Sequence record: PV231354.1
Strand: one strand, 5' to 3'
DNA length: 64,000 nt
Part shown: positions 12,735 through 61,117 of the stretch, in pieces
How the letters are laid out: every line of letters starts with the position of its first letter
Numbering within the stretch: the first letter of the stretch is position 1
Made by a program: the position numbers and the translations under genes
Notes under the pieces: generated by a model
What the model saw: the letters and a program-made list of their open reading frames with translations, nothing else
What the model was told of the DNA's origin: nothing
Databases searched by the model: none

Positions 12735-12793
12735 GTTGTCGTCGAAGGCCCTTCTAGCGAGTCGGTGTCAGGCTGTCAACACTTGTCAGCCAG
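12735..12793 (-). promoter_or_regulatory. Early promoter with upstream element and leader
   Basis: CTGGC-N6-GTG-TTGACA-N17-TAGAAG then CGACGACAAC and GGAGG. Confidence 0.85.
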
Positions 12794-13394
12794 CGTCTTC
12801 CACCAGCCGCGCGATCCGCTCGAAGCCCAGTTCCAGGCGGCCCCAGAAGGCACCGGGCACGTGCGGCTTGACGACCTCGGTGAAGCGGGCGCGCTCCTTC
12901 AGGTACATCTTGGCCATGCCCAGATGCGGTGCGTTCGTCGCCGGGTCCTTGATCGAGGCCTCGACGTTGGCGATCCGATCGGCCAGCTTCAGGATGCAGG
13001 CCTCGGGGTGCTCGCCCAGCTTGCGGTAGATGTCCTCGTTGCGGGCCTTGCGGTTGGGGCCGATGCCCGACACCGCCCAGACCAGCGCCGCGACGCGCTC
13101 GCCGAACTTGTCCTCAACCATCTGCCGGCGGGCCTCGGGCGTCATGTCGAGGTGGGTGTCCTCGATCACGTCGTGCAGTTTGGCCGCCGCCGTCCAGGTG
13201 AAGCCCGCATAGCCGTAGTCGTCCAGGATGCGCTCGACCTTCTGGAGGTGGTAGAGGTAGGGCTGGCCGGCGTACTGCTGCTCGCCGTGCGCGGCGATGG
13301 CGAACTTCGTCGGGTCCTCCTGCTGGTAGGTGCCGGGGGCGTCCTCCATCAGGCTGGCCAGTTGATCGGGATCGGACAGGGGCGTGTCGGTCAT
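12786..13394 (-). CDS. RelA/SpoT-type HD hydrolase (small alarmone hydrolase-like)
   Basis: AHGEQQYAGQPYLYHL, AKLHDVIEDT, FGERVAALV, KLADRIAN. Confidence 0.85.
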   Translation of the reverse strand: MTDTPLSDPDQLASLMEDAPGTYQQEDPTKFAIAAHGEQQYAGQPYLYHLQKVERILDDYGYAGFTWTAAAKLHDVIEDTHLDMTPEARRQMVEDKFGERVAALVWAVSGIGPNRKARNEDIYRKLGEHPEACILKLADRIANVEASIKDPATNAPHLGMAKMYLKERARFTEVVKPHVPGAFWGRLELGFERIARLVEDAG

Positions 13395-13798
13395 GACGTT
13401 TTCTCGGGGATCAGGGTGAAGACCTCCACCCCCTCGTCGATGCGCATGTGGTGCGTCGGCGGGTGGGCGGGGTTGTAGCGGATGTAGCCGGCGAGGCCGC
13501 CGTCGATCATCGCGCCGCCGCGCTCCTGGTAGTCGTGGCGGAAGCGCGAGACCAGGAACGAGCCGTCGGCGAGCTTGATGGCCGAGAACACCGCCTCGCG
13601 GATCGAGGCCGCCGAGGTGATGTAGATGCCGTCCTTGAGCGGGTGGATGAAGAGGCCAAAGTAGTTGTCGTGGCCCTGCGAGCGATCCGGCGTCTCGGTG
13701 TAGAAGACGTAGAACGGCCCCTCCCGGTCCGGGAGGTCGTAGTAGCCCACGTACTTGGCGTTGTAGTGCTCTTCGGCGGCTTTGACGTTGATGCCCAT
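13391..13798 (-). CDS. hypothetical protein
   Basis: Coupled ORF. Confidence 0.7.
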   Translation of the reverse strand: MGINVKAAEEHYNAKYVGYYDLPDREGPFYVFYTETPDRSQGHDNYFGLFIHPLKDGIYITSAASIREAVFSAIKLADGSFLVSRFRHDYQERGGAMIDGGLAGYIRYNPAHPPTHHMRIDEGVEVFTLIPEKTS

Positions 13799-14298
13799 CA
13801 GGCGACCCTCAGAAATTCACCCCAGGCTGGGGCGGCGTATTTCAGGTAGGCCTCGTGCGCGGCCTCCGGCGTAGTATAGCGCCCCAGGAAGCGATAGACA
13901 CCATGAATGGTGATCTGGGCCTGGAACGGCTTGCTCTTGCACCGGCACTTGGTCACGCCCTTGGGCAGGGCGCCGATCGGGCGGCGGTTGACGAGGTTCT
14001 GAGACCGAGTCGCCTTCCGGAGGTTCTTGATCCGGTTGTTGCGGCGGTTGCAGTCCTCGTGGTCGACGTCATGGTCGGGGACGACCCCGTGGTGGAGCGC
14101 CCAGGCCAGCTTGTGGGCGGCGATCTGGATGCGGCGGCCCTCGAAAGGAACCTTGATCACCCGGTAGCCGTCCTGGTTGACCGTGCCCAGGCGCTTGCGG
14201 GTCTTGGAGCCCCGCAGGTAGATGGCGCCAGACGAAGCCTCGTAGCGGTAGCGCGCCTTGAGGTACTCGACCGGGATGACGTACTCTGCCCCCGACAT
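13798..14298 (-). CDS. HNH homing endonuclease with AP2-like domain
   Basis: AHKLAW, VDHEDCNRRNNRIKNLR; C-terminal KGV...FQAQI...LGRY...AHEAY. Confidence 0.88.
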   Translation of the reverse strand: MSGAEYVIPVEYLKARYRYEASSGAIYLRGSKTRKRLGTVNQDGYRVIKVPFEGRRIQIAAHKLAWALHHGVVPDHDVDHEDCNRRNNRIKNLRKATRSQNLVNRRPIGALPKGVTKCRCKSKPFQAQITIHGVYRFLGRYTTPEAAHEAYLKYAAPAWGEFLRVA

Positions 14299-14302
14299 GG
14301 GA

Positions 14303-14542
14303 TCAATCCTTCTTAGCGTGCCGCTTGAAGAGGAGATAGAAGAGGTAGGCGACCAGCACGCCGAGCCAGCAGAACCACAGGATCACCGCCTGCCCCAGGG
14401 TCATAAAGAAGAACCCGATCTTCCAGTCGTCGTTGAAACGGTTCTCCCGGTTCTCCCAGACCTTGGGGTAGTCGATGGCGTAGCGGTAGCCGATCCGGGC
14501 CAGCGCGATCAGGCCGCCCAGGATGAAATAGATGTCCTGCAT
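14303..14542 (-). CDS. Small membrane protein
   Basis: Two hydrophobic segments. Confidence 0.7.
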   Translation of the reverse strand: MQDIYFILGGLIALARIGYRYAIDYPKVWENRENRFNDDWKIGFFFMTLGQAVILWFCWLGVLVAYLFYLLFKRHAKKD

Positions 14543-14549
14543 GGCGGAC

Positions 14550-14825
14550 TTACTTCGTGGAGGCGTTGTCGACGGCGTCGACGGCCTTCTCCGCCAGGGC
14601 GCCCAGCTTCTTGCGGACGAAGAAGAACACGCCGGCCCAGAAGCCCAGGAACAGCGCCAGCGGCCAGATCAGGCCGATGATGATCCCGGCGATGCCGAAG
14701 AAGAAGCAGTAGACGCCGATGCCTTCGTAGTTGGTGATCCCCAGCTTGCGGAACACCGCCGGGAAGACGGTCGCGGCGGCGGCCCAGACGCCGGCGCAGA
14801 TGAAGAGCGCGGTGAGGAAATACAT
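14550..14825 (-). CDS. Small membrane protein
   Basis: Hydrophobic, coupled ORF. Confidence 0.7.
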   Translation of the reverse strand: MYFLTALFICAGVWAAAATVFPAVFRKLGITNYEGIGVYCFFFGIAGIIIGLIWPLALFLGFWAGVFFFVRKKLGALAEKAVDAVDNASTK

Positions 14826-15127
14826 CAGGTCGGTTCCTTTTCGAGCCCGTGGTCGGGGTCGTACTTGACGAGGATGCCGTCTTCGTTCCGGTGCTCCATC
14901 AGAGGCAGGCCGGAGACGAACTGCGGCACGAAGAGGTCGCGGCGCGGCTGCTGGAGCCAGATGAGGCCGGTCTCGGCCACCTGCGCGCGCTCGGCCGGCG
15001 AAAGCTCCCAGCAGGAGATCACGCCCTCAGGGCCGGTGTAGGTGTGCAGCGGGATGACCGAGTCCTCGTTGCCCGGCGCCGGGTTCCAGACCTTGTTGGA
15101 GCCGGCGAAGTTACGCGGCGTGGCCAT
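14825..15127 (-). CDS. Phage hypothetical protein
   Basis: ISCWELSPAERAQV motif; coupled ORF. Confidence 0.7.
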   Translation of the reverse strand: MATPRNFAGSNKVWNPAPGNEDSVIPLHTYTGPEGVISCWELSPAERAQVAETGLIWLQQPRRDLFVPQFVSGLPLMEHRNEDGILVKYDPDHGLEKEPT

Positions 15128-15885: not shown

Positions 15886-15888
15886 CGA

Positions 15889-17121: not shown

Positions 17122-17136
17122 GTGCTCCTCGCTGCC

Positions 17137-17186
17137 GTTGTCGTGATTTACGACTTTTGACCACGCCCTTCGTCGTCTGTCAACAC
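17137..17186 (-). promoter_or_regulatory. Possible promoter for rtcB
   Basis: GTGTTGACA inside the upstream gene, weak -10, CGACAAC leader then GAGGAG. Confidence 0.45.
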
Positions 17187-17569: not shown

Positions 17570-17587
17570 CGTTGCCTCCCTGAAACG

Positions 17588-17649: not shown

Positions 17650-18480
17650 TTAGTTCACCTTGACGAAGGGCACCGCCCCGCCGGTCGTGGTCGGCAGGCG
17701 GCCGTCCCACTTCTCGATCGCCTTCAGTTCGACGATCTGCGGGCTGGCCGCGATCGACGCCGCCAGCAAGCGGTTCGATTCGGCTTGACCACGGGCTTGC
17801 TCGATCGCGGCGTTGGCTTCAGCCTTGGCGACCTCGACGCGGGCGGTGGCCGCCACGGTGTCGGCGTCAGCCTTGGTCTTGGCTTGGATCGAGTCGAGGA
17901 TCACCTGCGGGTAGCGGATGTTGCCGATCCAGTCGAGTTGGCTGATCGTCACGCCCTCCTTGGCCCACTTGTGCTGGACCGTGGCGAGGGCCTTCTGGAT
18001 CACCTGCTGGCGACCGCCCTTGTAGAGGTACTCGACCGACACCAGTTCGGTTTCGCGGGCGATGGCCGAGCGCACGTCGTTGCGGATCGGGCCTTCGAAC
18101 AGTTGGTCGAACGACAGCCGGTACTTCTTGTAGAGCGCCGGCGCCGCCGCCGAGTCGACGCGCATGACGAGTTGGACGTCGGCGGTCATCGGCAGGGCGT
18201 TGTTGTCCGAGAACGTGACTTCTTCGTTCTCGCCGCCGCGCTCATCACGTTCGCGGGTGTAGGTGTAGGTGCGTTGGATCGCCGGGTAGTCGACGATCTT
18301 CTCGCCGAAGCTGTTGAAGTGCATGCCCGAGGACAGCGGAGCGGGATCGACACCCGAGCCGCCGACGGTGCGAATCTTCACGCCGATATTGCCGGGCTCG
18401 ACGGTGTGCCAGCCGCAGGCCGACATGGTCGCCGCCATGCCCATCAGGGCCACGGCAGTCAAAAGAGACTTGATCTTCAA
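17650..18480 (-). CDS. SPFH/band-7 (prohibitin-like) lipoprotein
   Basis: Lipobox-like MSAC; VEPGNIGVKI, ADV, coiled coil AEANAAIEQARGQAESN, IEKWDGRLP. Confidence 0.88.
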   Translation of the reverse strand: MKIKSLLTAVALMGMAATMSACGWHTVEPGNIGVKIRTVGGSGVDPAPLSSGMHFNSFGEKIVDYPAIQRTYTYTRERDERGGENEEVTFSDNNALPMTADVQLVMRVDSAAAPALYKKYRLSFDQLFEGPIRNDVRSAIARETELVSVEYLYKGGRQQVIQKALATVQHKWAKEGVTISQLDWIGNIRYPQVILDSIQAKTKADADTVAATARVEVAKAEANAAIEQARGQAESNRLLAASIAASPQIVELKAIEKWDGRLPTTTGGAVPFVKVN

Positions 18481-19806: not shown

Positions 19807-19855
19807 GTTGTCGTCGGGCGTGACTTCTAGCCGGCGTCCGTGGGGCTGTCAACAC
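19807..19855 (-). promoter_or_regulatory. Early promoter with leader
   Basis: GTG-TTGACA-N17-TAGAAG, CGACGACAAC. Confidence 0.8.
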
Positions 19856-20392: not shown

Positions 20393-21292
20393 CTACCAGC
20401 CGAACTTGGTGGCGCAGACCGGGCCGATGCCGGCGTCGATCGAGGCGTGATTGGTCAGTTCCCGGCCGCAGCACGAGCAGGAGCCGGTGCGCTGTCCATA
20501 GGCGATGGCGGCGGCGTGCGGATCGGCCGCCAGGGCGAGGATTTCGGCTTCCTGCTCGGCGGTGCAGTCGCGCACCTTGAGGAACTTGCCGTTCATCACC
20601 TTGCCCATGTACACGCCCTCGACGGTGCGCACGTAGATGGCGCCGGCGTTGGTGCTGTCCATGGCGGCGGGCTTGAACTTGTAGCCGGCCAGCCGCAGGG
20701 TGATGTTCTTCAGGCCCGAGCCCTTGGCGTGGAAGAAGGCTTCCTCCAGCTTGGCGAGCGAGATGGCGGGCGCGGCGGCTTCGCGGGCGACCCGCTCGGC
20801 TTCGCGTTGGATCGCGCGCTTCTTGTCCTCGGCCGCCAGCCGCTGGACGGTGGCAAGCTGCTTCTCCGACAGGTGACCGTATTGCTCGACGGCCTGGAGC
20901 ATCTTGTGGGCGAAGTCAAAGCGCGGGGCGGTCTTGACCATCCACGTCATCTCCTCGGCGTGCGCCAGCTTCCAGGCGGCGCGCTGGGCTTGGAGATCAG
21001 CCACGGCCTGGGCCTTCTTCTTGTCGGCGTTGGCGCGGCGGCGGGCGCGTTCCTCGGGCGAGGTCTTGCGCACGAACTTGCCCTTGCCCTTGCAGACGAA
21101 GCACTGGCGGCCGTACTGCGACATGCCGCGATACGTGCCCGTGCCCCGGCACTTGGGGCAGAGTTCGATCCACTCGGCCGGCGGCGGGGTCTCGTCGACG
21201 AAATCGACGCCCGCTTCCATGGGCTCACCCGGCTGGGTTTCCCGGACCACCGGCTCGGTGATCAGTTCATCCATATCAGCGAAAAGGTCCAC
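20393..21292 (-). CDS. Zn-finger phage protein (DUF6011-like C-terminus)
   Basis: CPKCRGTG...CFVCKGKG; C-terminal CSCCGRELT...GIGPVC. Confidence 0.8.
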   Translation of the reverse strand: MDLFADMDELITEPVVRETQPGEPMEAGVDFVDETPPPAEWIELCPKCRGTGTYRGMSQYGRQCFVCKGKGKFVRKTSPEERARRRANADKKKAQAVADLQAQRAAWKLAHAEEMTWMVKTAPRFDFAHKMLQAVEQYGHLSEKQLATVQRLAAEDKKRAIQREAERVAREAAAPAISLAKLEEAFFHAKGSGLKNITLRLAGYKFKPAAMDSTNAGAIYVRTVEGVYMGKVMNGKFLKVRDCTAEQEAEILALAADPHAAAIAYGQRTGSCSCCGRELTNHASIDAGIGPVCATKFGW

Positions 21293-21299: not shown

Positions 21300-21365
21300 C
21301 TCCATCAGCAGGTGATGGAGCCCTTCTAGGCCTCTCGACCTAGCCTGTCAACACTCTCGCGCCAA
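21300..21365 (-). promoter_or_regulatory. Early promoter with 8-bp palindrome over start site/RBS
   Basis: TTGGC-N6-GTG-TTGACA-N17-TAGAAG; CTCCATCA-N5-TGATGGAG. Confidence 0.8.
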
Positions 21366-24251: not shown

Positions 24252-24616
24252 CAGGCCGACACCTTCGCCAGTTGCTTTTCCAGTTCGGCGCGCAGTTCGG
24301 CGTCGGTCAGGCCCAGGCGCTCCTTCATGAACGCCACGGCGTCAGCCGGGTTGTCGAAGGAGCGGGTGTCCGCATCGGTGCTGTCGCGCAGGCCACGCAC
24401 CTCGGTCACGCCCCAGAAAGTCCCCCAGGCGCTCGCGACGACGGCCGCCAGCGCTACGAAGAACGCGCCGCCAAACTGGTGCGCGTCAGCGCGCTCGATC
24501 AGTTCGGCGCCGGCGAAGGACACGGCGATGAGCGCCACCGCAGCCAGATGCAGCATGGCGCTCTTGCGCGTGTAGGTCGGGGTCACCTTGAGGGTGAACT
24601 TGTCGCTGGTCTCCAA
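24251..24616 (-). CDS. Membrane protein
   Basis: Two hydrophobic segments; first gene after a promoter. Confidence 0.7.
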   Translation of the reverse strand: METSDKFTLKVTPTYTRKSAMLHLAAVALIAVSFAGAELIERADAHQFGGAFFVALAAVVASAWGTFWGVTEVRGLRDSTDADTRSFDNPADAVAFMKERLGLTDAELRAELEKQLAKVSA

Positions 24617-24633: not shown

Positions 24634-24691
24634 GTTGTCGTCGAGGGGCTTATAGGCGGAGGTCAGCGACCTGTCAACACTCTCACGCCAA
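24634..24691 (-). promoter_or_regulatory. Early promoter with upstream element and leader
   Basis: TTGGC-N6-GTG-TTGACA-N17-TATAAG, CGACGACAAC. Confidence 0.85.
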
Positions 24692-26095: not shown

Positions 26096-26424
26096 TTCTT
26101 GCCCCTCGGACGATTGTTCTCGAACCACGCGTGCCACTCGGCCTTGGTCATCCAGGGCTGGGTGCGGTGGGCGTTGTAGAGGGCAAGGCCCTCCTCGGTG
26201 ACGGTGTAGAACTTCGAGCCGCGCTCCATGTGTGGCATGCGCTGCTCGGACTTGGCGAGACCACGCTTTTCGAGCTTGGCCAGGGTCGCCGAATGGTGCG
26301 AGCCGTTCGAGCCGCCGACATCCATGGTGCGGTGTCGGCGGATCGGCTCATCGCGGAAGGACGGGATCAGGCACCCCAGGACCTCCCAGTCGCGGTCGGT
26401 CAGTGGGGACAGGCGTCGGGTCAT
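26092..26424 (-). CDS. Small winged-helix-like protein
   Basis: LTDRDWEVL...TLAKLEKRGLA...YTVTEEG. Confidence 0.6.
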   Translation of the reverse strand: MTRRLSPLTDRDWEVLGCLIPSFRDEPIRRHRTMDVGGSNGSHHSATLAKLEKRGLAKSEQRMPHMERGSKFYTVTEEGLALYNAHRTQPWMTKAEWHAWFENNRPRGKK

Positions 26425-26437: not shown

Positions 26438-26495
26438 TTGTCGTCGTCTCGACATCTAGGAGGCTTTTCCGAGTCTGTCAACACAATCACGCCAG
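26438..26495 (-). promoter_or_regulatory. Early promoter with upstream element
   Basis: CTGGC-N6-GTG-TTGACA-N17-TAGATG, CGACGACAA. Confidence 0.82.
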
Positions 26496-27815: not shown

Positions 27816-28120
27816 CGGCGGACCACCGGCATGGTCTGGATCGAGAAATCGACGTGCTTGTGGTTGCAATGCCCCGCGCCCGGTTGGATCGCCTCCAGGG
27901 CGTCCTCGGTCCCGCGCTCCCAGGCGTCGCGCGCGGCGTAGACTTCCGAGGGCTTGGCCGAGGGGTCCACGCTGGGCATCTGGTAGCGGCGGGAGATCAC
28001 GCTGTTCAGCTTGGTGACGACGTCCTCGGCGTGCGCCAAGTCGGCGAACGCGGTGAGGTTGGTGACGCCGCCGGCGTCGTAGTCGCGGTCATCCATGACC
28101 AGAATGTAGACGGTGTCCAC
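27812..28120 (-). CDS. hypothetical protein
   Basis: First gene after a promoter; GGAGG RBS. Confidence 0.72.
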   Translation of the reverse strand: MDTVYILVMDDRDYDAGGVTNLTAFADLAHAEDVVTKLNSVISRRYQMPSVDPSAKPSEVYAARDAWERGTEDALEAIQPGAGHCNHKHVDFSIQTMPVVRR

Positions 28121-28133: not shown

Positions 28134-28178
28134 GTTGTCGTCGGAGGCCTTCCTAGACTGGCGCGAGTGTGTTGTCAA
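28134..28178 (-). promoter_or_regulatory. Early promoter with inverted element in spacer
   Basis: TTGACA-ACACACTCGCGCCAGTC-TAGGAA, CGACGACAAC. Confidence 0.82.
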
Positions 28179-29803: not shown

Positions 29804-29846
29804 CTTCTAGCGAAGCTTCACCAGGACGTCAACACTCTAACGCCAG
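29804..29846 (-). promoter_or_regulatory. Early promoter for ACP gene
   Basis: CTGGC-N6-GTG-TTGACG-N17-TAGAAG. Confidence 0.78.
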
Positions 29847-32686: not shown

Positions 32687-32734
32687 GTGTCGTCGGCCGT
32701 GACTTTAGAGGGTCACGGCCGAGCCTGTCAACAC
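32687..32734 (-). promoter_or_regulatory. Promoter with 10-bp inverted repeat around -10
   Basis: GTG-TTGACA-N18-TAAAGT; CGGCCGTGAC-N8-GTCACGGCCG. Confidence 0.72.
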
Positions 32735-34534: not shown

Positions 34535-34824
34535 CAGCGGCCCTTCGCCGGGCGCTTGAAGCGGCCGTTCTCGTCGTAGCTGTCGACGCTGGCGCCGGGC
34601 GTGTCCCAGCCGAACATCGAGCCGAACTCCATGGCCGAGGCCTGGGCGGGCGTGACGCCCATGCGCTTGTTCAGGCTGGCGACGATCTCCGCGCCCTGGG
34701 GGCCGTAGTTGGGATTGTAGTAGCCGGTCTCGCCACGCTTGACGATCACGGTCTCGCCCGTGGTCGACAGGACCACATAGGCGGTCTCGGGCAGGGCGGC
34801 GAGGTTGGTTTCGAGCAGGGACAT
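34534..34824 (-). CDS. hypothetical protein
   Basis: First gene after a promoter; GGAGG RBS. Confidence 0.75.
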   Translation of the reverse strand: MSLLETNLAALPETAYVVLSTTGETVIVKRGETGYYNPNYGPQGAEIVASLNKRMGVTPAQASAMEFGSMFGWDTPGASVDSYDENGRFKRPAKGR

Positions 34825-34837: not shown

Positions 34838-34896
34838 GTTGTCGTCGACGCTCCCTATAGACCCGGCCTGTCAGCCTGTCAACACTCGACAGCCAA
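34838..34896 (-). promoter_or_regulatory. Early promoter with upstream element and leader
   Basis: TTGGC-N6-GTG-TTGACA-N17-TATAGG, CGACGACAAC. Confidence 0.85.
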
Positions 34897-39158: not shown

Positions 39159-39218
39159 ATGTCGTCGTCTCGACCCTTCTAGGTGGAGGTTCCCGTTCTG
39201 TCAACACACAACCGCCAA
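39159..39218 (-). promoter_or_regulatory. Early promoter with upstream element
   Basis: TTGGC-N6-GTG-TTGACA-N17-TAGAAG, CGACGACA. Confidence 0.83.
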
Positions 39219-39224: not shown

Positions 39225-39257
39225 AAAAAGAAACCGCCGACCCGAAGGCCGGCGGTT
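39225..39257 (-). terminator. Rho-independent terminator
   Basis: AACCGCCG-GCC-TTCG-GGT-CGGCGGTT (C-UUCG-G loop) then TCTTTTT. Confidence 0.88.
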
Positions 39258-42415: not shown

Positions 42416-42601
42416 CTACTCCTGTTCTGCTTTGGCGGGACGCCGGCTTCTGGACTGACGCGGGACGAACACCAGGGCGACGGTCGAGCCGCCGGTGTAC
42501 TTGGTGCGGCGGCTATAGAGCCAACCGCCCTCGATTTCCAGGCGCTCGGTCACCTGACCATCGCCCTCGTCGATCTTTTCCCATTTCGTCTTCTTGGCCA
42601 T
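42416..42601 (-). CDS. Small hypothetical protein
   Basis: GAGGAG RBS; TERLEIEGGWLY. Confidence 0.72.
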   Translation of the reverse strand: MAKKTKWEKIDEGDGQVTERLEIEGGWLYSRRTKYTGGSTVALVFVPRQSRSRRPAKAEQE

Positions 42602-42603
42602 GA

Positions 42604-42653
42604 CGCTCCTCGATTTTCGCCGGCACCCTAGAGGAGCGCCGATGTGTTGACAA
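42604..42653 (-). promoter_or_regulatory. Leftward promoter of divergent pair
   Basis: TTGTCA-N17-TAGGGT with an 8-bp inverted repeat covering the RBS. Confidence 0.68.
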
Positions 42654-42666
42654 GCGCCAAATGGCT

Positions 42667-42724
42667 CTGGCTGGCGAGTGTTGACAAGGCGGCGGTGGTC
42701 CCTTAGAAGGGCGGCGACGACAAC
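42667..42724 (+). promoter_or_regulatory. Rightward promoter of divergent pair
   Basis: CTGGC-N6-GTG-TTGACA-N17-TAGAAG, CGACGACAAC. Confidence 0.85.
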
Positions 42725-42738
42725 GAAAGGAGGCGCCG

Positions 42739-43038
42739 ATGCGCTACGTTCTGGAGTACATGGACTGCGACGACCAGATCGTCCAGGTCGACTTCGAAGC
42801 CCCCACCCGCGCCTCGGCGATCGCCAAGGCCAAGCGCCTCTTCGTGAAGGCGGTCGAGGCCAGCGGCCGGTCGATCTTCACCGGCTACATGTTCGAGGAC
42901 CACTCGATCACCATGAAGGTGAAGCTGGTCCCGTTCGGCACCCTGAGCCGCTACCTGGGCCTGGGCAAGGTCACCGCCGCTAACATCTCGTTCGACGACC
43001 GCGACGCCAAGATCGCCCGCCAGGACATGGCCGCATGA
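42739..43038 (+). CDS. hypothetical protein
   Basis: GGAGG RBS; first gene after a promoter. Confidence 0.75.
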   Translation: MRYVLEYMDCDDQIVQVDFEAPTRASAIAKAKRLFVKAVEASGRSIFTGYMFEDHSITMKVKLVPFGTLSRYLGLGKVTAANISFDDRDAKIARQDMAA

Positions 43039-44443: not shown

Positions 44444-44632
44444 GTGACCAACGAGGAGATCACCTTCGCGGGCCTGATCAAGGCCATGGAGGACGCCCGC
44501 CGTGAAGCCCGCGCGGTGGGCGATCTCCTCAAGGCCGCCGAGATCGACGGCTGGTTCAAGGAGCACGCCCGGATCATCCGGGTGATCCGCGACAAGGCCG
44601 AGGCCGAAGAATTCGACAATCCGTTGGCGTGA
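44444..44632 (+). CDS. hypothetical protein
   Basis: ORF in operon. Confidence 0.65.
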   Translation: MTNEEITFAGLIKAMEDARREARAVGDLLKAAEIDGWFKEHARIIRVIRDKAEAEEFDNPLA

Positions 44633-44682
44633 GAGTGTTGACAGTCTCGCCGCGCCCGGCTACAAGCCTCCTCGACGACAAC
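44624..44682 (+). promoter_or_regulatory. Early promoter with upstream element and leader
   Basis: TTGGC-N6-GTG-TTGACA-N17-TACAAG, CGACGACAAC. Confidence 0.85.
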
Positions 44683-44696: not shown

Positions 44697-45860
44697 TTGA
44701 CCGATTTCCCGATCATCCGCGCCGCCATTGAAGGCCGCCGCGCCGCTGGTTTCGACACCGTCCTGGCCAACGCCGACGCCTTCGCTGCCGAGGGCGTGCT
44801 GATCAAGGCCGAGTTCGAGGACATCAAGGGCGTCTTCAGCCGCTGCCTCTCCGACGCCTGGGAAGTCGTGCGCAAGCGCCACTTCTTCATCGACCACGCC
44901 CTGCGCTCCAAGGAAGTCGAGGACCTCTTCTGGAGCTTCTCGATCCCCTATCCGCACGTCATGCCGGGCTTCCTGAAGAAGACCCTGGCGGCCAAGAACA
45001 TCCCGGCCAACGTCCGCGAAGACCTCGTGGCCCTGTTCAACGAGGGCATCGCCCTCAACGACAAGCTGGTGGCACTCAAGCCTCTGATCGGCAAGCGCGC
45101 GCCCAAGAAGACCAAGGTCGAGATCGAGCGCGAGGGCAAGGAACGCACCTGCCAAATCTGCGGTCGCGGCATCCTGGCCGAGGGCGGCATCATCGCCCAC
45201 CACGGCTACACCCGCCCCTACGAGGGCTGGCAGACCGCCTCCTGCTCTGGCGCCCGCGAGGTTCCGTTCGAACTGAGCCGCGACGAACTGGGCAAAGAGA
45301 TCGCCGCCCTGAAGGCGTGGCGCGTGCGCAAGGTGAACGAGCGCGCGGCGATCGAAGCCGAGACCGTCAAGCTGATCCTGAAGTATCAGGTCTCCGAGCA
45401 GGACCCGCGCAAGGCGCAGGGCTTCAAGCTGACCGTCGATCGCCAGATCGAAGTCACCCGCGACACCTTCGAGGCCCTGAAGGTCTCCACGCCCGAGGCC
45501 TTCTCGGGCAAGTACAACCCCCGCAAGGAGGGCAAGTACACCTACGAGGCCCTGACCTTCGACGGCCTGAAAGAGCAGGCCCTGGGCATGGTCGACATCG
45601 AGATCGGCCGCCTGGACAACGACATCCTGCGCCAGCAGGCCCGCTATGACGCCTGGAGCCAGAAGGCGATCTTCGCCAAGGGCCGCTATTGGTTCATCGG
45701 TGATGAGGTCCAGACCGCCGACGGCGCGGTGGGCAGCATCAAGGGCTTCTACCAGCACTATCCGCCGCAGCCGGGCGACGTCGCGGGCGGCGTGCGTCTC
45801 GGGGCCGAGACCAGCGGTTTCGTCTCCTGGAACGTCGAGAGCCTGGAGCCGGTGGCCTGA
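44697..45860 (+). CDS. hypothetical protein with CxxC/HGY/C metal motif
   Basis: TCQICGR...AHHGY...SCSG. Confidence 0.78.
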   Translation: MTDFPIIRAAIEGRRAAGFDTVLANADAFAAEGVLIKAEFEDIKGVFSRCLSDAWEVVRKRHFFIDHALRSKEVEDLFWSFSIPYPHVMPGFLKKTLAAKNIPANVREDLVALFNEGIALNDKLVALKPLIGKRAPKKTKVEIEREGKERTCQICGRGILAEGGIIAHHGYTRPYEGWQTASCSGAREVPFELSRDELGKEIAALKAWRVRKVNERAAIEAETVKLILKYQVSEQDPRKAQGFKLTVDRQIEVTRDTFEALKVSTPEAFSGKYNPRKEGKYTYEALTFDGLKEQALGMVDIEIGRLDNDILRQQARYDAWSQKAIFAKGRYWFIGDEVQTADGAVGSIKGFYQHYPPQPGDVAGGVRLGAETSGFVSWNVESLEPVA

Positions 45861-47713: not shown

Positions 47714-47783
47714 TTGGCGTTAGAGTGTTGACAGTCATTGGGGCCTCCTCTATATCCACCCTCGACGACAACGAGGAGGCCCC
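47714..47783 (+). promoter_or_regulatory. Early promoter with upstream element, leader and 11-bp inverted repeat
   Basis: TTGGC-N6-GTG-TTGACA-N17-TATATC; GGGGCCTCCTC...GAGGAGGCCCC. Confidence 0.87.
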
Positions 47784-47784: not shown

Positions 47785-49533
47785 ATGACGACCGAGACCA
47801 TGACCCTGAGCTTCCGTATCGAAGGCGCCGCCCTGGTGGAGCGCGCCCGCGACCGGGTCATCGAAGGCGCCTGGGAGCATGGCCTGCGCATCCTCGTCGA
47901 GGGTCTGCACGGCATGACCTACGAGATCGCCATCGACATCCTGATGGGCAAGTACACCCTGGGCGGCTGGTCCTCGGACCCCGAGGGCGTCTACCTCACC
48001 GAGCAAGACCCCGAGGACGAGACCTTCAAGCGCTACAAGGAGACGTTCGACTTCCAGTTCGCCGGCGTCTTCAAGGACGAGACGGGCCGCATCATGCGCC
48101 CCTACGCCATCGTCGACAGCTACGGCAAGAAGGACTTCGACTCCAAGTACCGCTACGACCACGCCCGCGCGCGCGGCTCGGACGAGTTCCTGTCGCGCCC
48201 GGTGCGCTACCACGACATCCTGGGCAAGGACCCGATCGACTGGGCCTATCGCGCCCTGCATTACGCCAACCTGCCGCAGCAAGACATCGTCAAGCGGGTC
48301 AAGAACCCCGGCGAATACCACGGCACGATCCAGGAGATGGCCGCGCTATTCGAGGTCATCCACGACTACCCCAAGCTCCTGCTGCCCTACGTCACCAACA
48401 GCGCCCAGGAGGCCGTCGACAAAGCGGTCGCCTCCGGCCGCCGGATGGAGAAGCGCGGCTATGTCCACGAGTACGGCCCCAATGATCCGTTCGCTGAGTT
48501 CCACGCCGTGACGACCACGGCGATCGACAACTTGCCGCCCCAGTGGGTGATCGAGAACCAAGCCTATGAGCCCCCGGCGCCGGTCAAGGCCCTGGAGGAC
48601 TTCAAGCAGGGCGTCGCGAGCGCCCCTGATGAGGTCTCGGCGATGAACCGGATGATCGTCAAGGAGGTCAACGCCGGCACGAGCATGTCGACCGCCATCG
48701 CCCTGGCCCGCGCCAAGATGGCGCTGATGGGTGGCATGGCCGAGGACCCTGAAGAGCGCATGTCGGCGATTAACGCCCACTTGGCGGCGGAGGCCGAGCG
48801 CGCCGAAGGCAAGTCCAACGAGACCTACCGCAAGGCGATCCAGGAGCAGGCCGCCGGCGACTACTTCGATCTCGTGTACACGGGTAAGGGTGGCGAGGAG
48901 GTGACCCTGAAGGTCCCGACCGCGCCGTTCGAGAAGTGGTGCCTGTGGCGCACCGCCGGCGCTCACCTCGCCAAGCCGTGGAAGCGCGTCACCTATTCGG
49001 GTCTGAAGTGCTTCGGCGACGACCCCTATCACACCGACTGGGTCATCGGCGCGGGCCTGGAGCCCGAGGATTGGCCGACCCGCAGCGACGACCCGCTGCA
49101 CAAGGCCGCCTGGGACAAGCGCTTCGAGGTCGCCCAGAGCAAGATGGGCGGCAATCTGGTGGTCCTGCTGGGCACGGGCTTCGTGACCGGCAAGATCAAG
49201 CACCTCAAGCCGGGCGAGACCCTGGAGCGGGGGCAGATCGGCGTGATCCGCAACGCTGGCCCCGACTACGTCCAGGCCGCCGTCAGCGCGATCGACAACA
49301 ACGCCGCCCTGATCACCGAGAACGGCGGCAACGTCGCCCACCTCGTCACCGAGTTCCGGGACAAGCCGCTGCGTCTGGTGCGCATCGCCGACGCCCGCAA
49401 GATTTTCAAGGACGGCATGGAGGTCGACCTCGACCTGGATAAGGCATGGCGCCGTATCTACGAAGGCTCGCGCGGTCCCGCGCCGGGTGACCTCTACCTG
49501 CCGCCGGAATGGGAGATTCAAGATGACGCATGA
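47785..49533 (+). CDS. Large protein with C-terminal PEP-utiliser phospho-His swivel domain
   Basis: ALITENGGNVAHLVTEFRD...ARKIFKDGMEVDLD; start moved to MTTETM. Confidence 0.72.
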   Translation: MTTETMTLSFRIEGAALVERARDRVIEGAWEHGLRILVEGLHGMTYEIAIDILMGKYTLGGWSSDPEGVYLTEQDPEDETFKRYKETFDFQFAGVFKDETGRIMRPYAIVDSYGKKDFDSKYRYDHARARGSDEFLSRPVRYHDILGKDPIDWAYRALHYANLPQQDIVKRVKNPGEYHGTIQEMAALFEVIHDYPKLLLPYVTNSAQEAVDKAVASGRRMEKRGYVHEYGPNDPFAEFHAVTTTAIDNLPPQWVIENQAYEPPAPVKALEDFKQGVASAPDEVSAMNRMIVKEVNAGTSMSTAIALARAKMALMGGMAEDPEERMSAINAHLAAEAERAEGKSNETYRKAIQEQAAGDYFDLVYTGKGGEEVTLKVPTAPFEKWCLWRTAGAHLAKPWKRVTYSGLKCFGDDPYHTDWVIGAGLEPEDWPTRSDDPLHKAAWDKRFEVAQSKMGGNLVVLLGTGFVTGKIKHLKPGETLERGQIGVIRNAGPDYVQAAVSAIDNNAALITENGGNVAHLVTEFRDKPLRLVRIADARKIFKDGMEVDLDLDKAWRRIYEGSRGPAPGDLYLPPEWEIQDDA

Positions 49534-51284: not shown

Positions 51285-51508
51285 TCGACTACGTCTACCG
51301 CAAAGACCCGCGCGGCAGCGACTACGGCGCCCAGCGGATGGACCTGAGTGAAGCCCTGGCGGTGGTCGCGGCCGAGAAGCAGGACTTCCTCATTCGCTTG
51401 GTCGAGGTCCTGCACGAGAACAACCTCCTGCGCGACGCCGACGTGCTGGAGTTGCTCGGCAAGGGCTGGGGCCTGGAGGCCTACGACGTCCTGTACGTAG
51501 ACGATTGA
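51281..51508 (+). CDS. hypothetical protein
   Basis: GTGA overlap. Confidence 0.65.
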   Translation: MIDYVYRKDPRGSDYGAQRMDLSEALAVVAAEKQDFLIRLVEVLHENNLLRDADVLELLGKGWGLEAYDVLYVDD

Positions 51509-51549
51509 CAACACTCTCGCGCCAGCATAGAAGCCTTCTCGACGACAAC
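51505..51549 (+). promoter_or_regulatory. Early promoter with inverted element in spacer
   Basis: TTGACA-ACACTCTCGCGCCAGCA-TAGAAG, CGACGACAAC. Confidence 0.85.
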
Positions 51550-51562: not shown

Positions 51563-51934
51563 GTGAAGCTCGCGACCCAAGACCGGACCGATCCCCGCCT
51601 GAACGCCGACTACCGCCTGATCAAGGCGGTCTTCTACTACGGCGGCCCGGCCGAGTACCCGATCCACCTGGACGAACGCTGGAGTGCGGTGACGCCGGCC
51701 CAGGTCGAGGACCAGATTTCGGTCCTCTGCCGCGACCTCGCCAAATGCGCGGGCAACACCCTGGCGCCGGCGACCTTCTACGAGCGCGCCAAGCTGAGCT
51801 TCGCCGAGGTGCCGCCGGTGTCCGACGAGTTCTGGGGCCTGATCTCCGAGACCACCAAGCAGAACATCCTCGCCCTGAAGGATCGCTTCACCGTCCACGG
51901 CAGCGGCTTCATGCTCTCGTGGGCCAAGGTCTGA
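51563..51934 (+). CDS. hypothetical protein
   Basis: GGAGG RBS. Confidence 0.72.
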   Translation: MKLATQDRTDPRLNADYRLIKAVFYYGGPAEYPIHLDERWSAVTPAQVEDQISVLCRDLAKCAGNTLAPATFYERAKLSFAEVPPVSDEFWGLISETTKQNILALKDRFTVHGSGFMLSWAKV

Positions 51935-52977: not shown

Positions 52978-53036
52978 TTGGCCGTCTTGTGTTGACAAAG
53001 GCAGGTTCGCCGGCCTAGAACGTCATCGACGACAAC
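52978..53036 (+). promoter_or_regulatory. Early promoter with upstream element and leader
   Basis: TTGGC-N6-GTG-TTGACA-N18-TAGAAC, CGACGACAAC. Confidence 0.83.
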
Positions 53037-53048: not shown

Positions 53049-53405
53049 ATGCCGCTGTATGATTTCCCGACCGGCCCGACCACGATGGAAGACATCGAAG
53101 CGTTCGTCGCCGGCGCCCAGGCGGTGGTCAACGCCCAGATGGCGAAGACCTTCCCGAACGTGAGCCCGCCGGTCCTGACGATCGAGCCGGTGCGCGCCAA
53201 CAGCCAGTTCGCCAAGATCGTGGCAAGCGACCGCGCCCAGCGCTCGGTCTGGGCGTTCGTTCGCCTGGAGAACGGCCTGATCTACAAGCCTTCCTCCTGG
53301 AAGGTCCCGGCCAAGCACGCGCGCGGCACCATCCACTCCGCTGGCCACGGCGCCGAGTACGTCGACTGGACCGGCCCGCGCTACATCAAGGACATGCGCC
53401 CGTGA
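53049..53405 (+). CDS. Phage hypothetical protein
   Basis: SVWAFV...GLIYKPSSWKVPAKHARG. Confidence 0.75.
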   Translation: MPLYDFPTGPTTMEDIEAFVAGAQAVVNAQMAKTFPNVSPPVLTIEPVRANSQFAKIVASDRAQRSVWAFVRLENGLIYKPSSWKVPAKHARGTIHSAGHGAEYVDWTGPRYIKDMRP

Positions 53406-57244: not shown

Positions 57245-57245
57245 C

Positions 57246-59007: not shown

Positions 59008-59009
59008 CG

Positions 59010-59624: not shown

Positions 59625-59631
59625 AAAGTGT

Positions 59632-59684
59632 TTGACAACACTCTCACGCCAACATAGAACCCTCCTCGACGACAACGAGGAGGG
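59632..59684 (+). promoter_or_regulatory. Early promoter with inverted element in spacer and 9-bp anti-SD repeat
   Basis: TTGACA-ACACTCTCACGCCAACA-TAGAAC; CCCTCCTCG-ACGACAA-CGAGGAGGG. Confidence 0.87.
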
Positions 59685-59688
59685 CCGC

Positions 59689-60108
59689 ATGGCTTACGTA
59701 ATTCCCGACCTGAGCACCTTCACCTTCACCGACCCGTCGGTGGAAAGCTTCGCCAGGGCCATGGTCTCGGCGATCGAGGCCAACCAAGCGATCATCGACG
59801 AGTTCGCCAAGAGCCTGATCGAGAGCCCGGTGCGCGCGCTGGAGCGCAGCCTGTCGGTCAAGCTGGCCGCCGTCCGTCAGAACGCGGCGAAGGAAGCCCT
59901 CGAACAGACCCTGGACACGCTCCTGCACGGGACCGACAAGACCTGGGCGGTGATCAAGCTGGAACTCCAGCAAGCGCTCCTGCATCTCGTGGTCTACCAC
60001 GCGTCGCGGTCGACGCGCTCGACCAACGCCGAGGCCAACGACATGGAGCGCTTCGACCTGCAAGCCAAGGCCGAGTTGCTCGACCGCGTCATGAAGGGCC
60101 GCTTCTAA
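59689..60108 (+). CDS. hypothetical protein
   Basis: Start moved to MAYVIP. Confidence 0.72.
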   Translation: MAYVIPDLSTFTFTDPSVESFARAMVSAIEANQAIIDEFAKSLIESPVRALERSLSVKLAAVRQNAAKEALEQTLDTLLHGTDKTWAVIKLELQQALLHLVVYHASRSTRSTNAEANDMERFDLQAKAELLDRVMKGRF

Positions 60109-60350
60109 TGCGCGGCGTCGAGGTCAACGAGAGCTATCAGACCGAGCAGCGCTCGTTTGATGGCCAACTCGCCGGCAAGTACGGCGCTGCCTCGGGCGGC
60201 CCGGACCTGACCCGTGAACAGTGGCAGGCGATGCAGCGGGCCGACCGCAAGCGCTTCGCCGGCTTCATCATGGGCGCCTTCGTGTTCATCTTCTGCCTGA
60301 CCTGGGTGATCAACGATCTGACCCACTTCGGCGCGGCCCTGCCCTTCTAA
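60108..60350 (+). CDS. Small membrane protein
   Basis: C-terminal transmembrane helix. Confidence 0.68.
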   Translation: MRGVEVNESYQTEQRSFDGQLAGKYGAASGGPDLTREQWQAMQRADRKRFAGFIMGAFVFIFCLTWVINDLTHFGAALPF

Positions 60351-60360
60351 GCGAGGACCC

Positions 60361-60666
60361 ATGACCCAGGCGCTGACCTTCGAAACCACGTCGTCCCGGC
60401 TCGCCGTCGAGGTCAGCAGGGACGACTTCCTGGCCCTGACCGTCGCCGAGGAAATCCTGGCCAAGGGCAACTACCTGTCGCCCCATCTCAGCGCCCGGCT
60501 GGAGAACATCAACGGCGTCTGGGAGGTCGAGTACAACGGCCACTTCGGGGCCTACATCCACCTGACCCTGGACACCGAGGACGACACGCCCGAGGTGCGC
60601 CAGCAGATCGCCGACATCATCACCGACCAACTGGCCAAGGCCAGGGTCTGGAAGCGGGAGCGCTAG
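60361..60666 (+). CDS. hypothetical protein
   Basis: GAGG RBS. Confidence 0.7.
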   Translation: MTQALTFETTSSRLAVEVSRDDFLALTVAEEILAKGNYLSPHLSARLENINGVWEVEYNGHFGAYIHLTLDTEDDTPEVRQQIADIITDQLAKARVWKRER

Positions 60667-60667
60667 G

Positions 60668-61051
60668 ATGCAGAGCCACGATCAGCGCCTCGCCGAGGCC
60701 CTCGCCATCACCACCCAGCGCCCGGCCTGGATCGAGAAGAAGGGTGATCGCTACCACGTCATCACCAAGGGCGTGCTGTTCCCCAACACGCGCAATGCCA
60801 TCCACAAGACCTGGAGCCGCCGCGCCGGCGCCCTGGCCTGCATCCAGCAGGACGGCTACACCCTCCTCGACGGCGACTGCCCGCTGCCGGAGGTGACCCA
60901 GGCCCAGCGCGACGCCTACCAGTTCCAGGGCGCCGAGCGGCGCGAGGCCGTCGAGATGCTGAGCCGCGAACTGGGCATCCACCAGGACGAAATCCGCCGC
61001 GCGTTGCGCAACCTCGAAGGCAAGGGCCTCATCCAGTTCGGCGGGCGCTGA
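60668..61051 (+). CDS. hypothetical protein with C-terminal winged HTH
   Basis: LSRELGIHQDEIRRALRNLEGKGLI. Confidence 0.7.
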   Translation: MQSHDQRLAEALAITTQRPAWIEKKGDRYHVITKGVLFPNTRNAIHKTWSRRAGALACIQQDGYTLLDGDCPLPEVTQAQRDAYQFQGAERREAVEMLSRELGIHQDEIRRALRNLEGKGLIQFGGR

Positions 61052-61058
61052 TAGCAGC

Positions 61059-61117
61059 TTGGCGTTTGTGTGTTGACAGGCCCAGTCCGGTTCTGTAGAC
61101 CTCTGCTCGACGACAAC
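61059..61117 (+). promoter_or_regulatory. Early promoter with upstream element and leader
   Basis: TTGGC-N6-GTG-TTGACA-N17-TAGACC, CGACGACAAC. Confidence 0.85.

What the first reader, a model, noticed from the sequence alone, without database searches (positions are those of the whole stretch)
12777..61072. Bipartite element CAACAC-N6-GCCAR overlaps the -35 box of 15 promoters, in both orientations
Seen: 12 promoters carry YTGGC-N6-GTG directly upstream of TTGAC (near 12.79, 21.36, 24.69, 26.49, 29.84, 34.89, 39.21, 42.67, 44.62, 47.71, 52.98 and 61.06 kb). The 6-nt spacer varies but its length is fixed. In three others (28.16, 51.51, 59.64 kb) the same element is flipped and lies in the -35/-10 spacer (TTGA-CAACAC-N6-GCCAR). 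It is often embedded in the last codons of unrelated upstream genes in different frames (...KLA*, ...VWR*, ...DAG*, ...AVEC*), which implies DNA-level selection. Inference: because it occurs in both orientations it is not a sigma or alpha-CTD contact but an operator for a phage or host factor, probably a shut-off repressor or activator of all early promoters. Candidates in the window are the XRE protein, the GcrA homologue and the many winged-helix proteins.
Basis: partly seen in the sequence, partly recalled or inferred. Interest (0 to 1): 0.75.

Follow-up and report, generated by a model that had tools for sequence, protein, structure and literature searches.

The report
Shared operator-like element on phage early promoters
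A 17-base, two-part DNA motif sits on top of the RNA-polymerase docking site of about twenty early promoters of a phiCbK-type Caulobacter phage, in either orientation, and is most likely the landing site of a still unidentified regulator that switches this whole gene class together.

Summary
YTGGC-N6-GTGTTG occurs 15 times in the window, against 0.04 expected. Twelve copies abut a TTGACA -35 box. Three are inverted and lie inside the 17-nt spacer.

The window is Caulobacter phage RBC63/RBC8/RBC11, a Rogue-like phiCbK relative. Genome-wide there are 22 exact copies, and 20 lie in the two diverging arms of small early genes. The spacer length is always 6.

Between RBC63 and phiCbK the two half-sites are as conserved as the -35 box, while the promoter spacer and flanks have drifted. 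The element also occurs in Brevundimonas phages.

Two orthologous genes carry the forward form in one phage and the flipped form in the other. Two further geometries exist, one straddling a -35 box and one over a -10 box. Every geometry overlaps the core promoter, and those promoters are already near-consensus.

I read it as an operator for coordinated repression by a probably phage-encoded protein (confidence about 0.5).

The published TgrL (XRE) matrix does not fit the element. No element contains GANTC, the methylation site through which GcrA acts. Sigma-54, CtrA and UP-element readings fail. A conserved Cro/CI-like HTH gene that carries the element across its own -35 is a new candidate binder.

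I found no published description. It is a new member of a known kind.

The parts
12777..12793 (-). Element, forward type. -35 TTGACA 12774-12779; -10 TAGAAG 12751-12756; CGACGACAAC box 12735-12744; ATG 12716-12718.
   Evidence: the upstream ORF ends ...DAG* inside the element
21349..21365 (-). Element, forward type. -35 21346-21351; -10 TAGAAG 21323-21328; GTG start 21290-21292.
24675..24691 (-). Element, forward type. -35 24672-24677; -10 TATAAG 24649-24654; box 24634-24643; TTG start 24614-24616.
   Evidence: upstream ORF ends ...KLA*
26479..26495 (-). Element, forward type. -35 26476-26481; -10 TAGATG 26453-26458; ATG 26422-26424. The first gene downstream is a 110-aa winged-helix protein.
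28158..28174 (+). Element, flipped type; the promoter is on the - strand. -35 TTGACA 28173-28178; the element fills the spacer; -10 TAGGAA 28150-28155; box 28134-28143; GTG start 28118-28120.
   Evidence: the upstream ORF stops at the TGA of TTGACA
29830..29846 (-). Element, forward type. -35 TTGACG 29827-29832; -10 TAGAAG 29804-29809; no CGACGACAAC box.
   Evidence: upstream ORF ends ...VWR*
34880..34896 (-). Element, forward type. -35 34877-34882; -10 TATAGG 34854-34859; box 34838-34847; ATG 34822-34824.
   Evidence: upstream ORF ends ...AVEC*, encoded by the element
39202..39218 (-). Element, forward type, preceded by a terminator-like hairpin at 39225-39255. -35 39199-39204; -10 TAGAAG 39176-39181; GTG start 39144-39146. 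This promoter heads the operon that holds the tgrL (XRE) homologue at 37491-37871.
   Evidence: the 17-mer is identical in phiCbK
42667..42683 (+). Element, forward type; first promoter of the rightward arm. -35 42681-42686; -10 TAGAAG 42704-42709; box 42715-42724; ATG 42739-42741.
44624..44640 (+). Element, forward type. -35 44638-44643; -10 TACAAG 44661-44666; box 44673-44682; TTG start 44697-44699.
   Evidence: upstream ORF ends ...PLA*
47714..47730 (+). Element, forward type. -35 47728-47733; -10 TATATC 47751-47756; box 47763-47772; ATG 47785-47787.
51509..51525 (-). Element, flipped type; the promoter is on the + strand. -35 51505-51510; -10 TAGAAG 51528-51533; box 51540-51549; GTG start 51563-51565.
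   Evidence: also flipped at the orthologous phiCbK promoter
52978..52994 (+). Element, forward type. -35 52992-52997; 18-nt spacer; -10 TAGAAC 53016-53021; box 53027-53036; ATG 53049-53051.
59636..59652 (-). Element, flipped type; the promoter is on the + strand. -35 59632-59637; -10 TAGAAC 59655-59660; box 59667-59676; ATG 59689-59691. The orthologous phiCbK promoter carries a forward-type copy instead.
61059..61075 (+). Element, forward type. -35 61073-61078; -10 TAGACC 61096-61101; box 61108-61117; ATG 61130-61132. It lies just after the stop of a 127-aa HTH 'transcriptional regulator' gene (60668-61051).
17178..17186 (-). Half element. GTG-TTGACA promoter without YTGGC, upstream of the RtcB-like ligase gene.
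19847..19855 (-). Half element. GTG-TTGACA promoter with a CTAGAAG -10 and the CGACGACAAC box (19807-19816), but no YTGGC.
32726..32734 (-). Half element. GTG-TTGACA promoter without YTGGC.
42644..42660 (-). Divergent control region; putative leftward promoter of the GcrA-like operon. It reads TTGGCGC-TTGTCA-ACAC..., so the half-site words are in a non-canonical arrangement. On the + strand it reads GTGTTGACAAGCGCCAA.
   Evidence: conserved in phiCbK

Best explanation
The 17-bp element is a cis-acting operator. Its consensus is YTGGC-KnnnRW-GTGTTG, and WCA always follows it.

A sequence-specific DNA-binding protein reads the two unlike half-sites. Their centres lie about 11.5 bp apart, so they fall in successive major grooves on one face of the helix. 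Such a protein would be a monomer with two reading heads, or an asymmetric dimer.

The GTGTTG half always overlaps the -35 hexamer, through its TTG in forward sites and its CA in flipped sites. Elsewhere the element straddles a -35 box or covers a -10 box. A bound protein would therefore compete with sigma-73 RNA polymerase and turn down the whole early promoter class together. This could be shut-off after the first 15 minutes, or negative feedback.

The factor is probably phage-encoded. The best new candidate is the conserved Cro/CI-like HTH protein at RBC63 80,839-81,630, which lies outside the window. The early winged-helix and HTH proteins inside the window are the alternatives.

Shown here: the element, its geometry, its conservation and its interchangeability.
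Inferred: protein binding, the negative sign of the regulation, and the identity of the binder.
For: (1) Extreme enrichment and strict spacing.

(2) Purifying selection. In nine orthologous RBC63/phiCbK promoter pairs, identity is 0.91 for YTGGC, 1.0 for GTG and 1.0 for the -35 box. It is 0.62 for the promoter spacer and 0.44 for the upstream flank.

(3) Deep conservation. There are 9 sites in the early region of Brevundimonas phage Bajun, whose GcrA-like protein is only 27.5% identical. An exact copy sits at the orthologous integrase promoter of Brevundimonas phage Kikimora.

(4) Four geometries, all overlapping core promoter elements: forward at about -49 to -33, flipped at -31 to -15, straddling the -35 of the HTH gene at -41 to -25, and over the -10 box at RBC63 10,453.

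(5) Forward and flipped forms are exchanged at two orthologous genes between RBC63 and phiCbK, so evolution treats them as equivalent.

(6) The core promoters are already near-consensus: TTGACA, a 17-nt spacer and a TAGAAG-like -10. An activator is therefore not needed.

(7) The class is early and then falls. tgrL lies in an element-driven operon. It peaks at 15 min and then declines, and 41% of phiCbK genes show the same pattern (PMC10688885).

(8) The strict consensus is essentially absent from 596 Gb of bacterial genomes. It gives 3 hits, and one of them lies on a 210-kb phage-like contig.
Against: - No binding, footprint or expression data exist for any site.
- The early decline seen by RNA-seq could come from RNA decay, or from relative normalisation, rather than repression.
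- A forward element centred near -41 is also the classic position of class II activators.
- The candidate HTH protein looks like a dimeric Cro/CI-type repressor, and such proteins normally read dyad-symmetric sites. The element has no dyad symmetry.
- Colossus keeps that gene, yet showed no element in the 50 kb I examined.
- Only the strict 20-nt consensus could be searched in hosts. A degenerate host regulon, and so a host factor, is not excluded.
Confidence: 0.5

Rival explanations
1. Positive control site. An activator or RNA-polymerase-recruiting factor binds the element and boosts this promoter class. The factor could be a host protein, a product of the terminal-repeat pre-early genes, or a virion protein. 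It would act like a monomeric two-HTH activator such as MarA/SoxS, whose asymmetric site works in either orientation depending on its position.
For: - Forward sites are centred near -41, the class II activator position.
- The element is asymmetric and bipartite, about one helical turn long, as a marbox is (my own knowledge of MarA/SoxS/Rob).
- Orientation is coupled to position: forward when upstream, inverted when downstream.
- The phage infects swarmer cells, where some sigma-73 promoters are silenced (PMC1175088), so a booster could be useful.
Against: - The core promoters are already near-consensus.
- Five RBC63 promoters carry the element between -31 and -15. One gene has it across its -35 box and one across its -10 box. 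A bound protein there should hinder polymerase, not help it.
- The forward and flipped positions put the protein on different helical faces, because the proximal half-site centres lie about 7 bp apart. One specific contact with polymerase cannot be kept.
- None of the ten annotated DNA-binding proteins scanned matched an AraC-type domain. The proteome was not scanned in full.
Confidence: 0.2
2. Intrinsic promoter element read by the host polymerase itself, either as an extended -35 or as an UP-like element. It would make these promoters unusually strong without any extra factor.
For: - GTG precedes TTGACA even in the promoters that lack YTGGC, at 17.18, 19.85 and 32.73 kb.
- Both halves resemble -35-like TTGNC words 14 bp apart. 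Bajun uses TTGTC as the left half.
- A T-rich tract often precedes the element.
Against: - The element is G/C-rich, unlike UP elements.
- Flipped promoters have no GTG or YTGGC upstream of the -35 box. They carry the whole element inverted in the spacer, and they replace forward promoters at orthologous genes.
- In the HTH gene promoter the -35 box sits inside N6.
- A polymerase contact cannot be both mirrored and moved.
Confidence: 0.08
3. No function of its own. A promoter cassette spread by duplication and recombination, and the element is conserved by descent. Alternatively it serves as a recombination or module-shuffling site rather than a transcription signal.
For: - The promoters share about 100 bp of architecture, including the CGACGACAAC leader.
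- Cassettes have been exchanged at orthologous genes.
- The flipped promoters are very similar to one another.
- The phage encodes a tyrosine recombinase whose own promoter carries the element.
Against: - Within orthologous pairs the half-sites stay invariant while the adjacent spacer and flanks diverge.
- The element survives in Brevundimonas phages, where the rest of the cassette differs.
- The fixed N6 length and the A/T-only sixth spacer position indicate constraint.
- It lacks the inverted-repeat core typical of tyrosine-recombinase sites.
Confidence: 0.07

Closest known systems
Phage P1 C1 repressor operators (my own knowledge; Heinrich, Velleman and Schuster 1995 review)
   Same: - An asymmetric 17-bp operator with no dyad symmetry.
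- More than a dozen copies dispersed over a large phage genome.
- Each copy overlaps a promoter, and copies occur in either orientation.
- One protein controls many scattered operons.
   Different: - There is no sequence resemblance to the P1 consensus.
- P1 is temperate and C1 maintains lysogeny. This phage is lytic, and the element marks an early class.
- The binder here is unknown.
- The strict mirror placement around the -35 box is not a described P1 feature.
Lambda / 434 / P22 OR-OL operators with Cro and CI
   Same: - 17-bp operators overlap the -35 and -10 boxes of strong early promoters.
- Cro turns early transcription down during lytic growth.
- A Cro/C2-like HTH protein is conserved in this phage family. 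The profile matches 434 Cro and P22 C2 at E = 0.006-0.04.
   Different: - Lambdoid operators are pseudo-palindromic and clustered in two control regions.
- This element has no dyad symmetry and lies at more than 20 separate promoters.
MarA/SoxS/Rob marbox (my own knowledge; Martin et al. 1999)
   Same: - An asymmetric bipartite site of about 20 bp, read by a monomer with two HTH motifs.
- Its orientation depends on its position relative to the -35 box, and it can overlap that box.
   Different: - Marboxes are activator sites and are degenerate.
- None is known inside the -35/-10 spacer.
- None of the ten proteins scanned here matched an AraC-type domain.
CtrA boxes in the terminal repeats of phiCbK-like phages (Mascolo et al. 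2022, PMC9437464)
   Same: A class-specific factor site overlies the -35 region of one block of phage promoters. It is present in this same genome at 1-10 kb.
   Different: - The sequence is different (TTAA-N7-TTAA).
- It occurs in a different genome region.
- The host factor is known.
- That paper does not mention the present element.
T4 MotA box of middle promoters
   Same: A phage-specific word near -30/-35 defines a temporal promoter class.
   Different: - MotA promoters lack a -35 box, whereas here TTGACA is intact.
- The RBC63 homologue of the protein that the Kikimora record names 'MotA' shows no MotA similarity in Pfam or PDB searches.

Membership tests
Caulobacter sigma-73 (housekeeping) promoter (the core that carries the element) | -35 TTGACgS and -10 GCTANAWC at sigma-70-like spacing (consensus cited from my own knowledge, Malakooti 1995) | tested here: met
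   Fourteen of the 15 promoters have TTGACA and one has TTGACG. Fourteen have a 17-nt spacer and one has 18. The -10 boxes are TAGAAG-like and often preceded by GC or C. The E. coli-type scan fails only because the -10 boxes lack the final T.
Sigma-54 (RpoN) promoter | GG and GC separated by exactly 10 nt (TGGCAC-N5-TTGC) | tested here: not met
   Ten nt after the GG of YTGGC the element reads TT, not GC. The TTG lies 2 nt too far away and is followed by A or T (element consensus).
CtrA box | TTAA-N7-TTAA(C) | tested here: not met
   The element has no TTAA half-sites. Genuine CtrA boxes occur only in the terminal-repeat promoters.
GcrA / CcrM methylation-dependent promoter | A GANTC methylation site in the recognition element | tested here: not met
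   None of the 22 elements contains GANTC. GAATC abuts the -35 box in a different promoter class of this phage.
TgrL / RtrA / RtrB / CdxA / CdxB XRE regulon site | A match to the published ChIP-seq position weight matrix (PMC10688885, S2 Table) | tested here: not met
   The best TgrL score over each element is 0.6-9.3 bits, out of a maximum of 18.8. All but one site score below 6.3 bits. None of the 40 best genome hits lies on an element; one lies within 20 nt of one.
UP element (alpha-CTD site) | An A/T-rich tract at a fixed upstream position and in a fixed orientation | tested here: not met
   The half-sites are G/C-rich. Five copies are inverted and lie downstream of the -35 box.
Dyad-symmetric (lambdoid or XRE-type) operator | Inverted-repeat half-sites | tested here: not met
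   The left half is YTGGCGYG and the reverse complement of the right half is CAACACTC. They share only 2 of 8 positions (consensus).
Dyad-symmetric (lambdoid or XRE-type) operator | Overlap with the core promoter | tested here: met
   All four geometries overlap the -35 box, the spacer or the -10 box.
P1 C1-type asymmetric dispersed operator | An asymmetric site of about 17 bp, in many dispersed promoter-overlapping copies, in both orientations | tested here: met
   There are 22 exact copies plus variants over 186 kb, in both orientations.
P1 C1-type asymmetric dispersed operator | Bound by a single repressor protein; homology to C1 or to its operator | not testable with these tools
   No binding data exist. 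The sequence is unrelated to the P1 consensus. This is a working analogy, not membership.
MarA/SoxS-type marbox | An AraC/XylS-family two-HTH monomer encoded or available | tested here: inconclusive
   Ten annotated DNA-binding proteins gave HTH_3, winged-helix and HNH domains but no AraC-type domain. The whole proteome and the host were not scanned.
T4 MotA-dependent middle promoter | No -35 box, with a MotA box at -30 and a MotA/AsiA pair | tested here: not met
   The -35 box is intact and consensus. The 'MotA' homologue gives only a weak IclR-HTH hit and no MotA match in PDB sequences.

The most novel reading that the evidence does not exclude
A lytic jumbo phage family, the Dolichocephalovirinae of Caulobacter and Brevundimonas, may time its largest gene class with one dedicated repressor. 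That repressor would read an asymmetric 17-bp operator placed on either side of the -35 box, or across it, at more than 20 dispersed promoters. This would be a P1-C1-like logic in a virulent phage. The repressor would be the family-wide Cro/CI-like HTH protein with a possibly S24-like, serine-less C-terminal domain. That protein also carries the operator across its own -35 box, so the early to middle switch would be a self-limiting negative-feedback circuit.
Probability: 0.25. Interest if true: 0.6.

Novelty: new member of a known kind. Interest (0 to 1): 0.5.

Why it matters
phiCbK is the standard phage of the Caulobacter cell-cycle model, yet its temporal programme has no known cis code apart from the CtrA boxes of the terminal repeats.

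This element, together with the two other promoter classes seen here, gives a concrete and testable map of three promoter classes. It also names a 17-bp probe with which the unknown regulator can be fished out.

The mirror placement, and the forward/flipped exchange at orthologous promoters, form a clean natural experiment. They indicate that the site works by occupying the promoter and not by a fixed contact with polymerase.

On the practical side, these are compact, strong Caulobacter promoters with a built-in operator, which could be useful parts for Caulobacter genetics.

Tried and rejected
TgrL (XRE) as the binder. Rejected with the published matrix.

GcrA homologue. Unlikely, because no element contains GANTC.

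Sigma-54, CtrA, UP-element and dyad-operator readings. Rejected on the sequence (see the membership tests).

MotA lead from the Kikimora annotation. No support in Pfam or PDB.

Host regulon. The strict consensus gave only 3 hits in 596 Gb. A degenerate pattern would have drowned in chance matches, so I did not run one.

IMG/VR search with the GcrA-like protein. It returned only the known isolates.

Published per-gene expression classes of phiCbK. The phage sheets of S3 Table are cut off in the stored file. I therefore could not compare the timing of forward, flipped and element-less operons.

Structure prediction of the conserved HTH protein. 

S24-like nature of its C-terminal domain. Support is weak: one of five homologues hits Peptidase_S24 at E = 0.047. 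There is also a PHROG 'transcriptional repressor' match over residues 24-246.

Rfam. No family matched in the window.

Literature. Searches for the motif and for phiCbK promoters found no description.

Full report
**What the window is.** A 6-kb piece is 100% identical to Caulobacter phages RBC63, RBC8 and RBC11. It is 98% identical to CcrRogue and about 78% identical to phiCbK. The window corresponds to about 123.9-187.9 kb of the 223-kb RBC63 genome, with a few small indels. Genes run leftward up to about 42.6 kb and rightward after it. I fetched the whole RBC63 genome and 100 kb of phiCbK for comparison.

**The observation.** YTGGC-N6-GTGTTG matches 15 times, against 0.04 expected. Aligned on the motif, 12 sites share one architecture:
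- the element,
- then TTGACA directly after it,
- then a 17-nt spacer,
- then a TAGAAG-like -10 box,
- then usually CGACGACAAC, GGAGG and a start codon.

In the other three sites the promoter strand reads TTGA-CAACAC-N6-GCCAR, followed two bases later by the -10 box. The same 17-mer therefore lies inverted inside the spacer, and transcription still runs with the neighbouring genes.

The E. coli-style scan finds no promoter, because these -10 boxes lack the final T. They fit the Caulobacter sigma-73 consensus, which I cite from my own knowledge. 'Promoter' remains a sequence inference.

Stop codons fall inside N6, or at the TGA of TTGACA, in three frames. Several proteins end in residues that the element itself encodes: LA*, WR*, LAxxC*.

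**Genome-wide picture.** RBC63 has 22 exact copies.
- Twenty lie between 136.7 and 196 kb, 15 forward and 5 flipped.
- One lies after the tRNA cluster, at 53.0 kb.
- One lies over a putative -10 box at 10.45 kb.
- A one-mismatch copy lies at the integrase promoter.

phiCbK has 16 exact copies in the homologous 100 kb, 13 forward and 3 flipped.

Only N6 spacing occurs. N6 is biased: G or T at its first base, G or A at its fifth, and only A or T at its sixth.

At least three promoters in the window keep GTG-TTGACA but lack YTGGC. The element is therefore not needed for a promoter of this type to exist.

**Selection.** In nine orthologous forward promoters of RBC63 and phiCbK, per-segment identity is as follows:

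| Segment | Identity |
|---|---|
| Upstream flank | 0.44 |
| YTGGC | 0.91 |
| N6 | 0.81 |
| GTG | 1.0 |
| -35 box | 1.0 |
| Promoter spacer | 0.62 |
| -10 box | 0.80 |

The element also occurs in more distant phages:
- The early region of Brevundimonas phage Bajun has nine copies. Some have TTGTC as the left half.
- Brevundimonas phage Kikimora has an exact copy at the orthologous integrase promoter.
- A 50-kb stretch of small rightward genes in CcrColossus has none. Its promoters carry other words next to the -35 box.

**Interchangeability.** The gene at window 59,689 has a flipped promoter in RBC63 but a forward-type one in phiCbK. The next promoter-bearing gene (RBC63 189,806, outside the window) shows the reverse.

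**More geometries.** A 263-aa HTH protein (RBC63 80,839-81,630) is conserved in every Dolichocephalovirinae genome in the collection.
- Its N-terminus resembles 434 Cro and P22 C2.
- Its C-terminal half aligns with a PHROG repressor family. One homologue weakly hits Peptidase_S24.
- Its promoter reads YTGGC-cTTGAT-GTGTTG-CCAA, then eight bases, then TAnAtC. The -35 box (TTGATG) therefore lies inside N6.
- This arrangement is exact in phiCbK, Magneto, BL57 and Bajun. It is one mismatch off in RBC63, and degenerate in Colossus and Domovoi.

Together with the 10.45-kb site, this gives four geometries. Their only common feature is overlap with the core promoter.

**What it is not.**
- The published TgrL matrix does not fit.
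- No element contains GANTC.
- The sigma-54 spacing is wrong.
- There are no TTAA half-sites.
- It is not A/T-rich.
- It has no dyad symmetry.
- The strict consensus is almost absent from bacterial genomes.

**Mechanism.** The promoters are near-consensus, so they should fire with host polymerase alone. tgrL lies in an element-driven operon and is an early gene that peaks at 15 min and then declines, as do 41% of phiCbK genes.

An asymmetric site that works upstream, mirrored downstream, across the -35 box and across the -10 box is what one expects of steric repression. It is not what one expects of a fixed activating contact. The forward and flipped positions even place the proximal half-site on different helical faces.

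I therefore favour a coordinated shut-off or feedback operator, read by a monomer with two reading heads or by an asymmetric dimer. The binder is unknown. The conserved HTH protein is attractive because it carries the element on its own promoter. However, Cro/CI-type dimers usually read palindromes.

**Context.** The same genome holds two other promoter classes:
- CtrA boxes in the terminal repeat, which are known (PMC9437464).
- About 22 copies of GTCGTGAATC-TTGACA in the structural and replication modules.

I found no paper describing the present element.

**Verdict.** The feature is real and strongly selected, and I found no published description of it. Its kind, a dispersed asymmetric operator on a phage promoter class, is known. 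P1 C1 operators are the closest analogue.

Noticed in passing
window: 12735-12744, 19807-19816, 24634-24643, 28134-28143, 34838-34847, 42715-42724, 44673-44682, 47763-47772, 51540-51549, 53027-53036, 59667-59676, 61108-61117: An exact CGACGACAAC box lies about 6-8 nt after the -10 box, at or near the predicted transcript start, and is followed by GGAGG. Twelve of the 13 exact copies in the window are in this position. It could be a leader element for translation or stability, or an initial-transcribed-sequence signal. No Rfam family matches.
   Followed up: partly
RBC63 genome outside the window: L002-L004 (19.9-118 kb) and L005 (205-207 kb): A second promoter class. About 22 copies of tGTCGTGAATC sit directly 5' of TTGACA, in the structural, lysis and replication modules. 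The word contains a CcrM/GcrA-type GANTC site. TTAACCA-like words often follow downstream. It never co-occurs with the YTGGC element.
   Followed up: partly
L002 1-10,200 (terminal repeat of RBC63): Nearly every gene of the terminal repeat has its own promoter, with a TTAAC-N6-TTAAGA CtrA-type box and a CTAGAGT- or CTAATGT-like -10 box. This agrees with Mascolo et al. 2022.
   Followed up: partly
L003 30839-31830 (RBC63 80,839-81,830), and L016-L019, L021-L024: A Cro/CI-like 263-aa HTH protein is a core gene of the whole subfamily, and it always follows the dUTPase gene. In phiCbK-like phages its promoter also holds a 13-nt inverted repeat (TTGCCAAAGAGGG / CCCTCTTTGTCAA) around the -10 box, in addition to the element.
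   Followed up: partly
window 42,600-42,740: The divergent control region holds two copies of GTGTTGACAAG 34 bp apart. The leftward promoter (GcrA-like operon) seems to use TTGTCA, which is the reverse complement of part of the first copy. This promoter lacks the CGACGACAAC box.
   Followed up: no
L020 (CcrColossus 175-225 kb): Colossus promoters carry different conserved words around the -35 box: aGAG-TTGACAG-MCGGC, and a second type with GTTTCTTTACA at the -10 box. This suggests lineage-specific operator codes.
   Followed up: no
L005 about 18,290-18,330 (RBC63 about 192.2 kb) and L007 (phiCbK about 186.0 kb): A conserved hairpin of about 28 nt (GTCCGAAATTTGT...ATTTCGGAC) lies in the leader between the CGACGACAAC box and the ribosome-binding site of one flipped promoter.
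   Followed up: no
L011 (NZ_JBKBMX010000004.1, 210-kb contig of a Brevundimonas MAG): This contig carries the exact consensus element. It also has a 44%-identical translated match (tblastx, 81 aa) to the RBC63 Holliday-junction-resolvase gene region. It is probably a phiCbK-like phage genome binned as bacterial.
   Followed up: partly
L008 24869-25459 (Kikimora) and L004 22764-23363 (RBC63): The Kikimora record names this protein 'middle transcription regulatory protein MotA'. The RBC63 homologue is 42% identical. It shows only a sub-threshold IclR-type HTH hit and no MotA similarity.
   Followed up: yes
RBC63 212,818 and phiCbK 205,247 (inside the large terminase gene, about 180 bp before the terminal-repeat boundary): A conserved near-match, TTGGCTCGCGTCTGTTG, scores 17.5 bits and has no promoter context. 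It is probably a coding coincidence, but it lies close to the repeat boundary.
   Followed up: no
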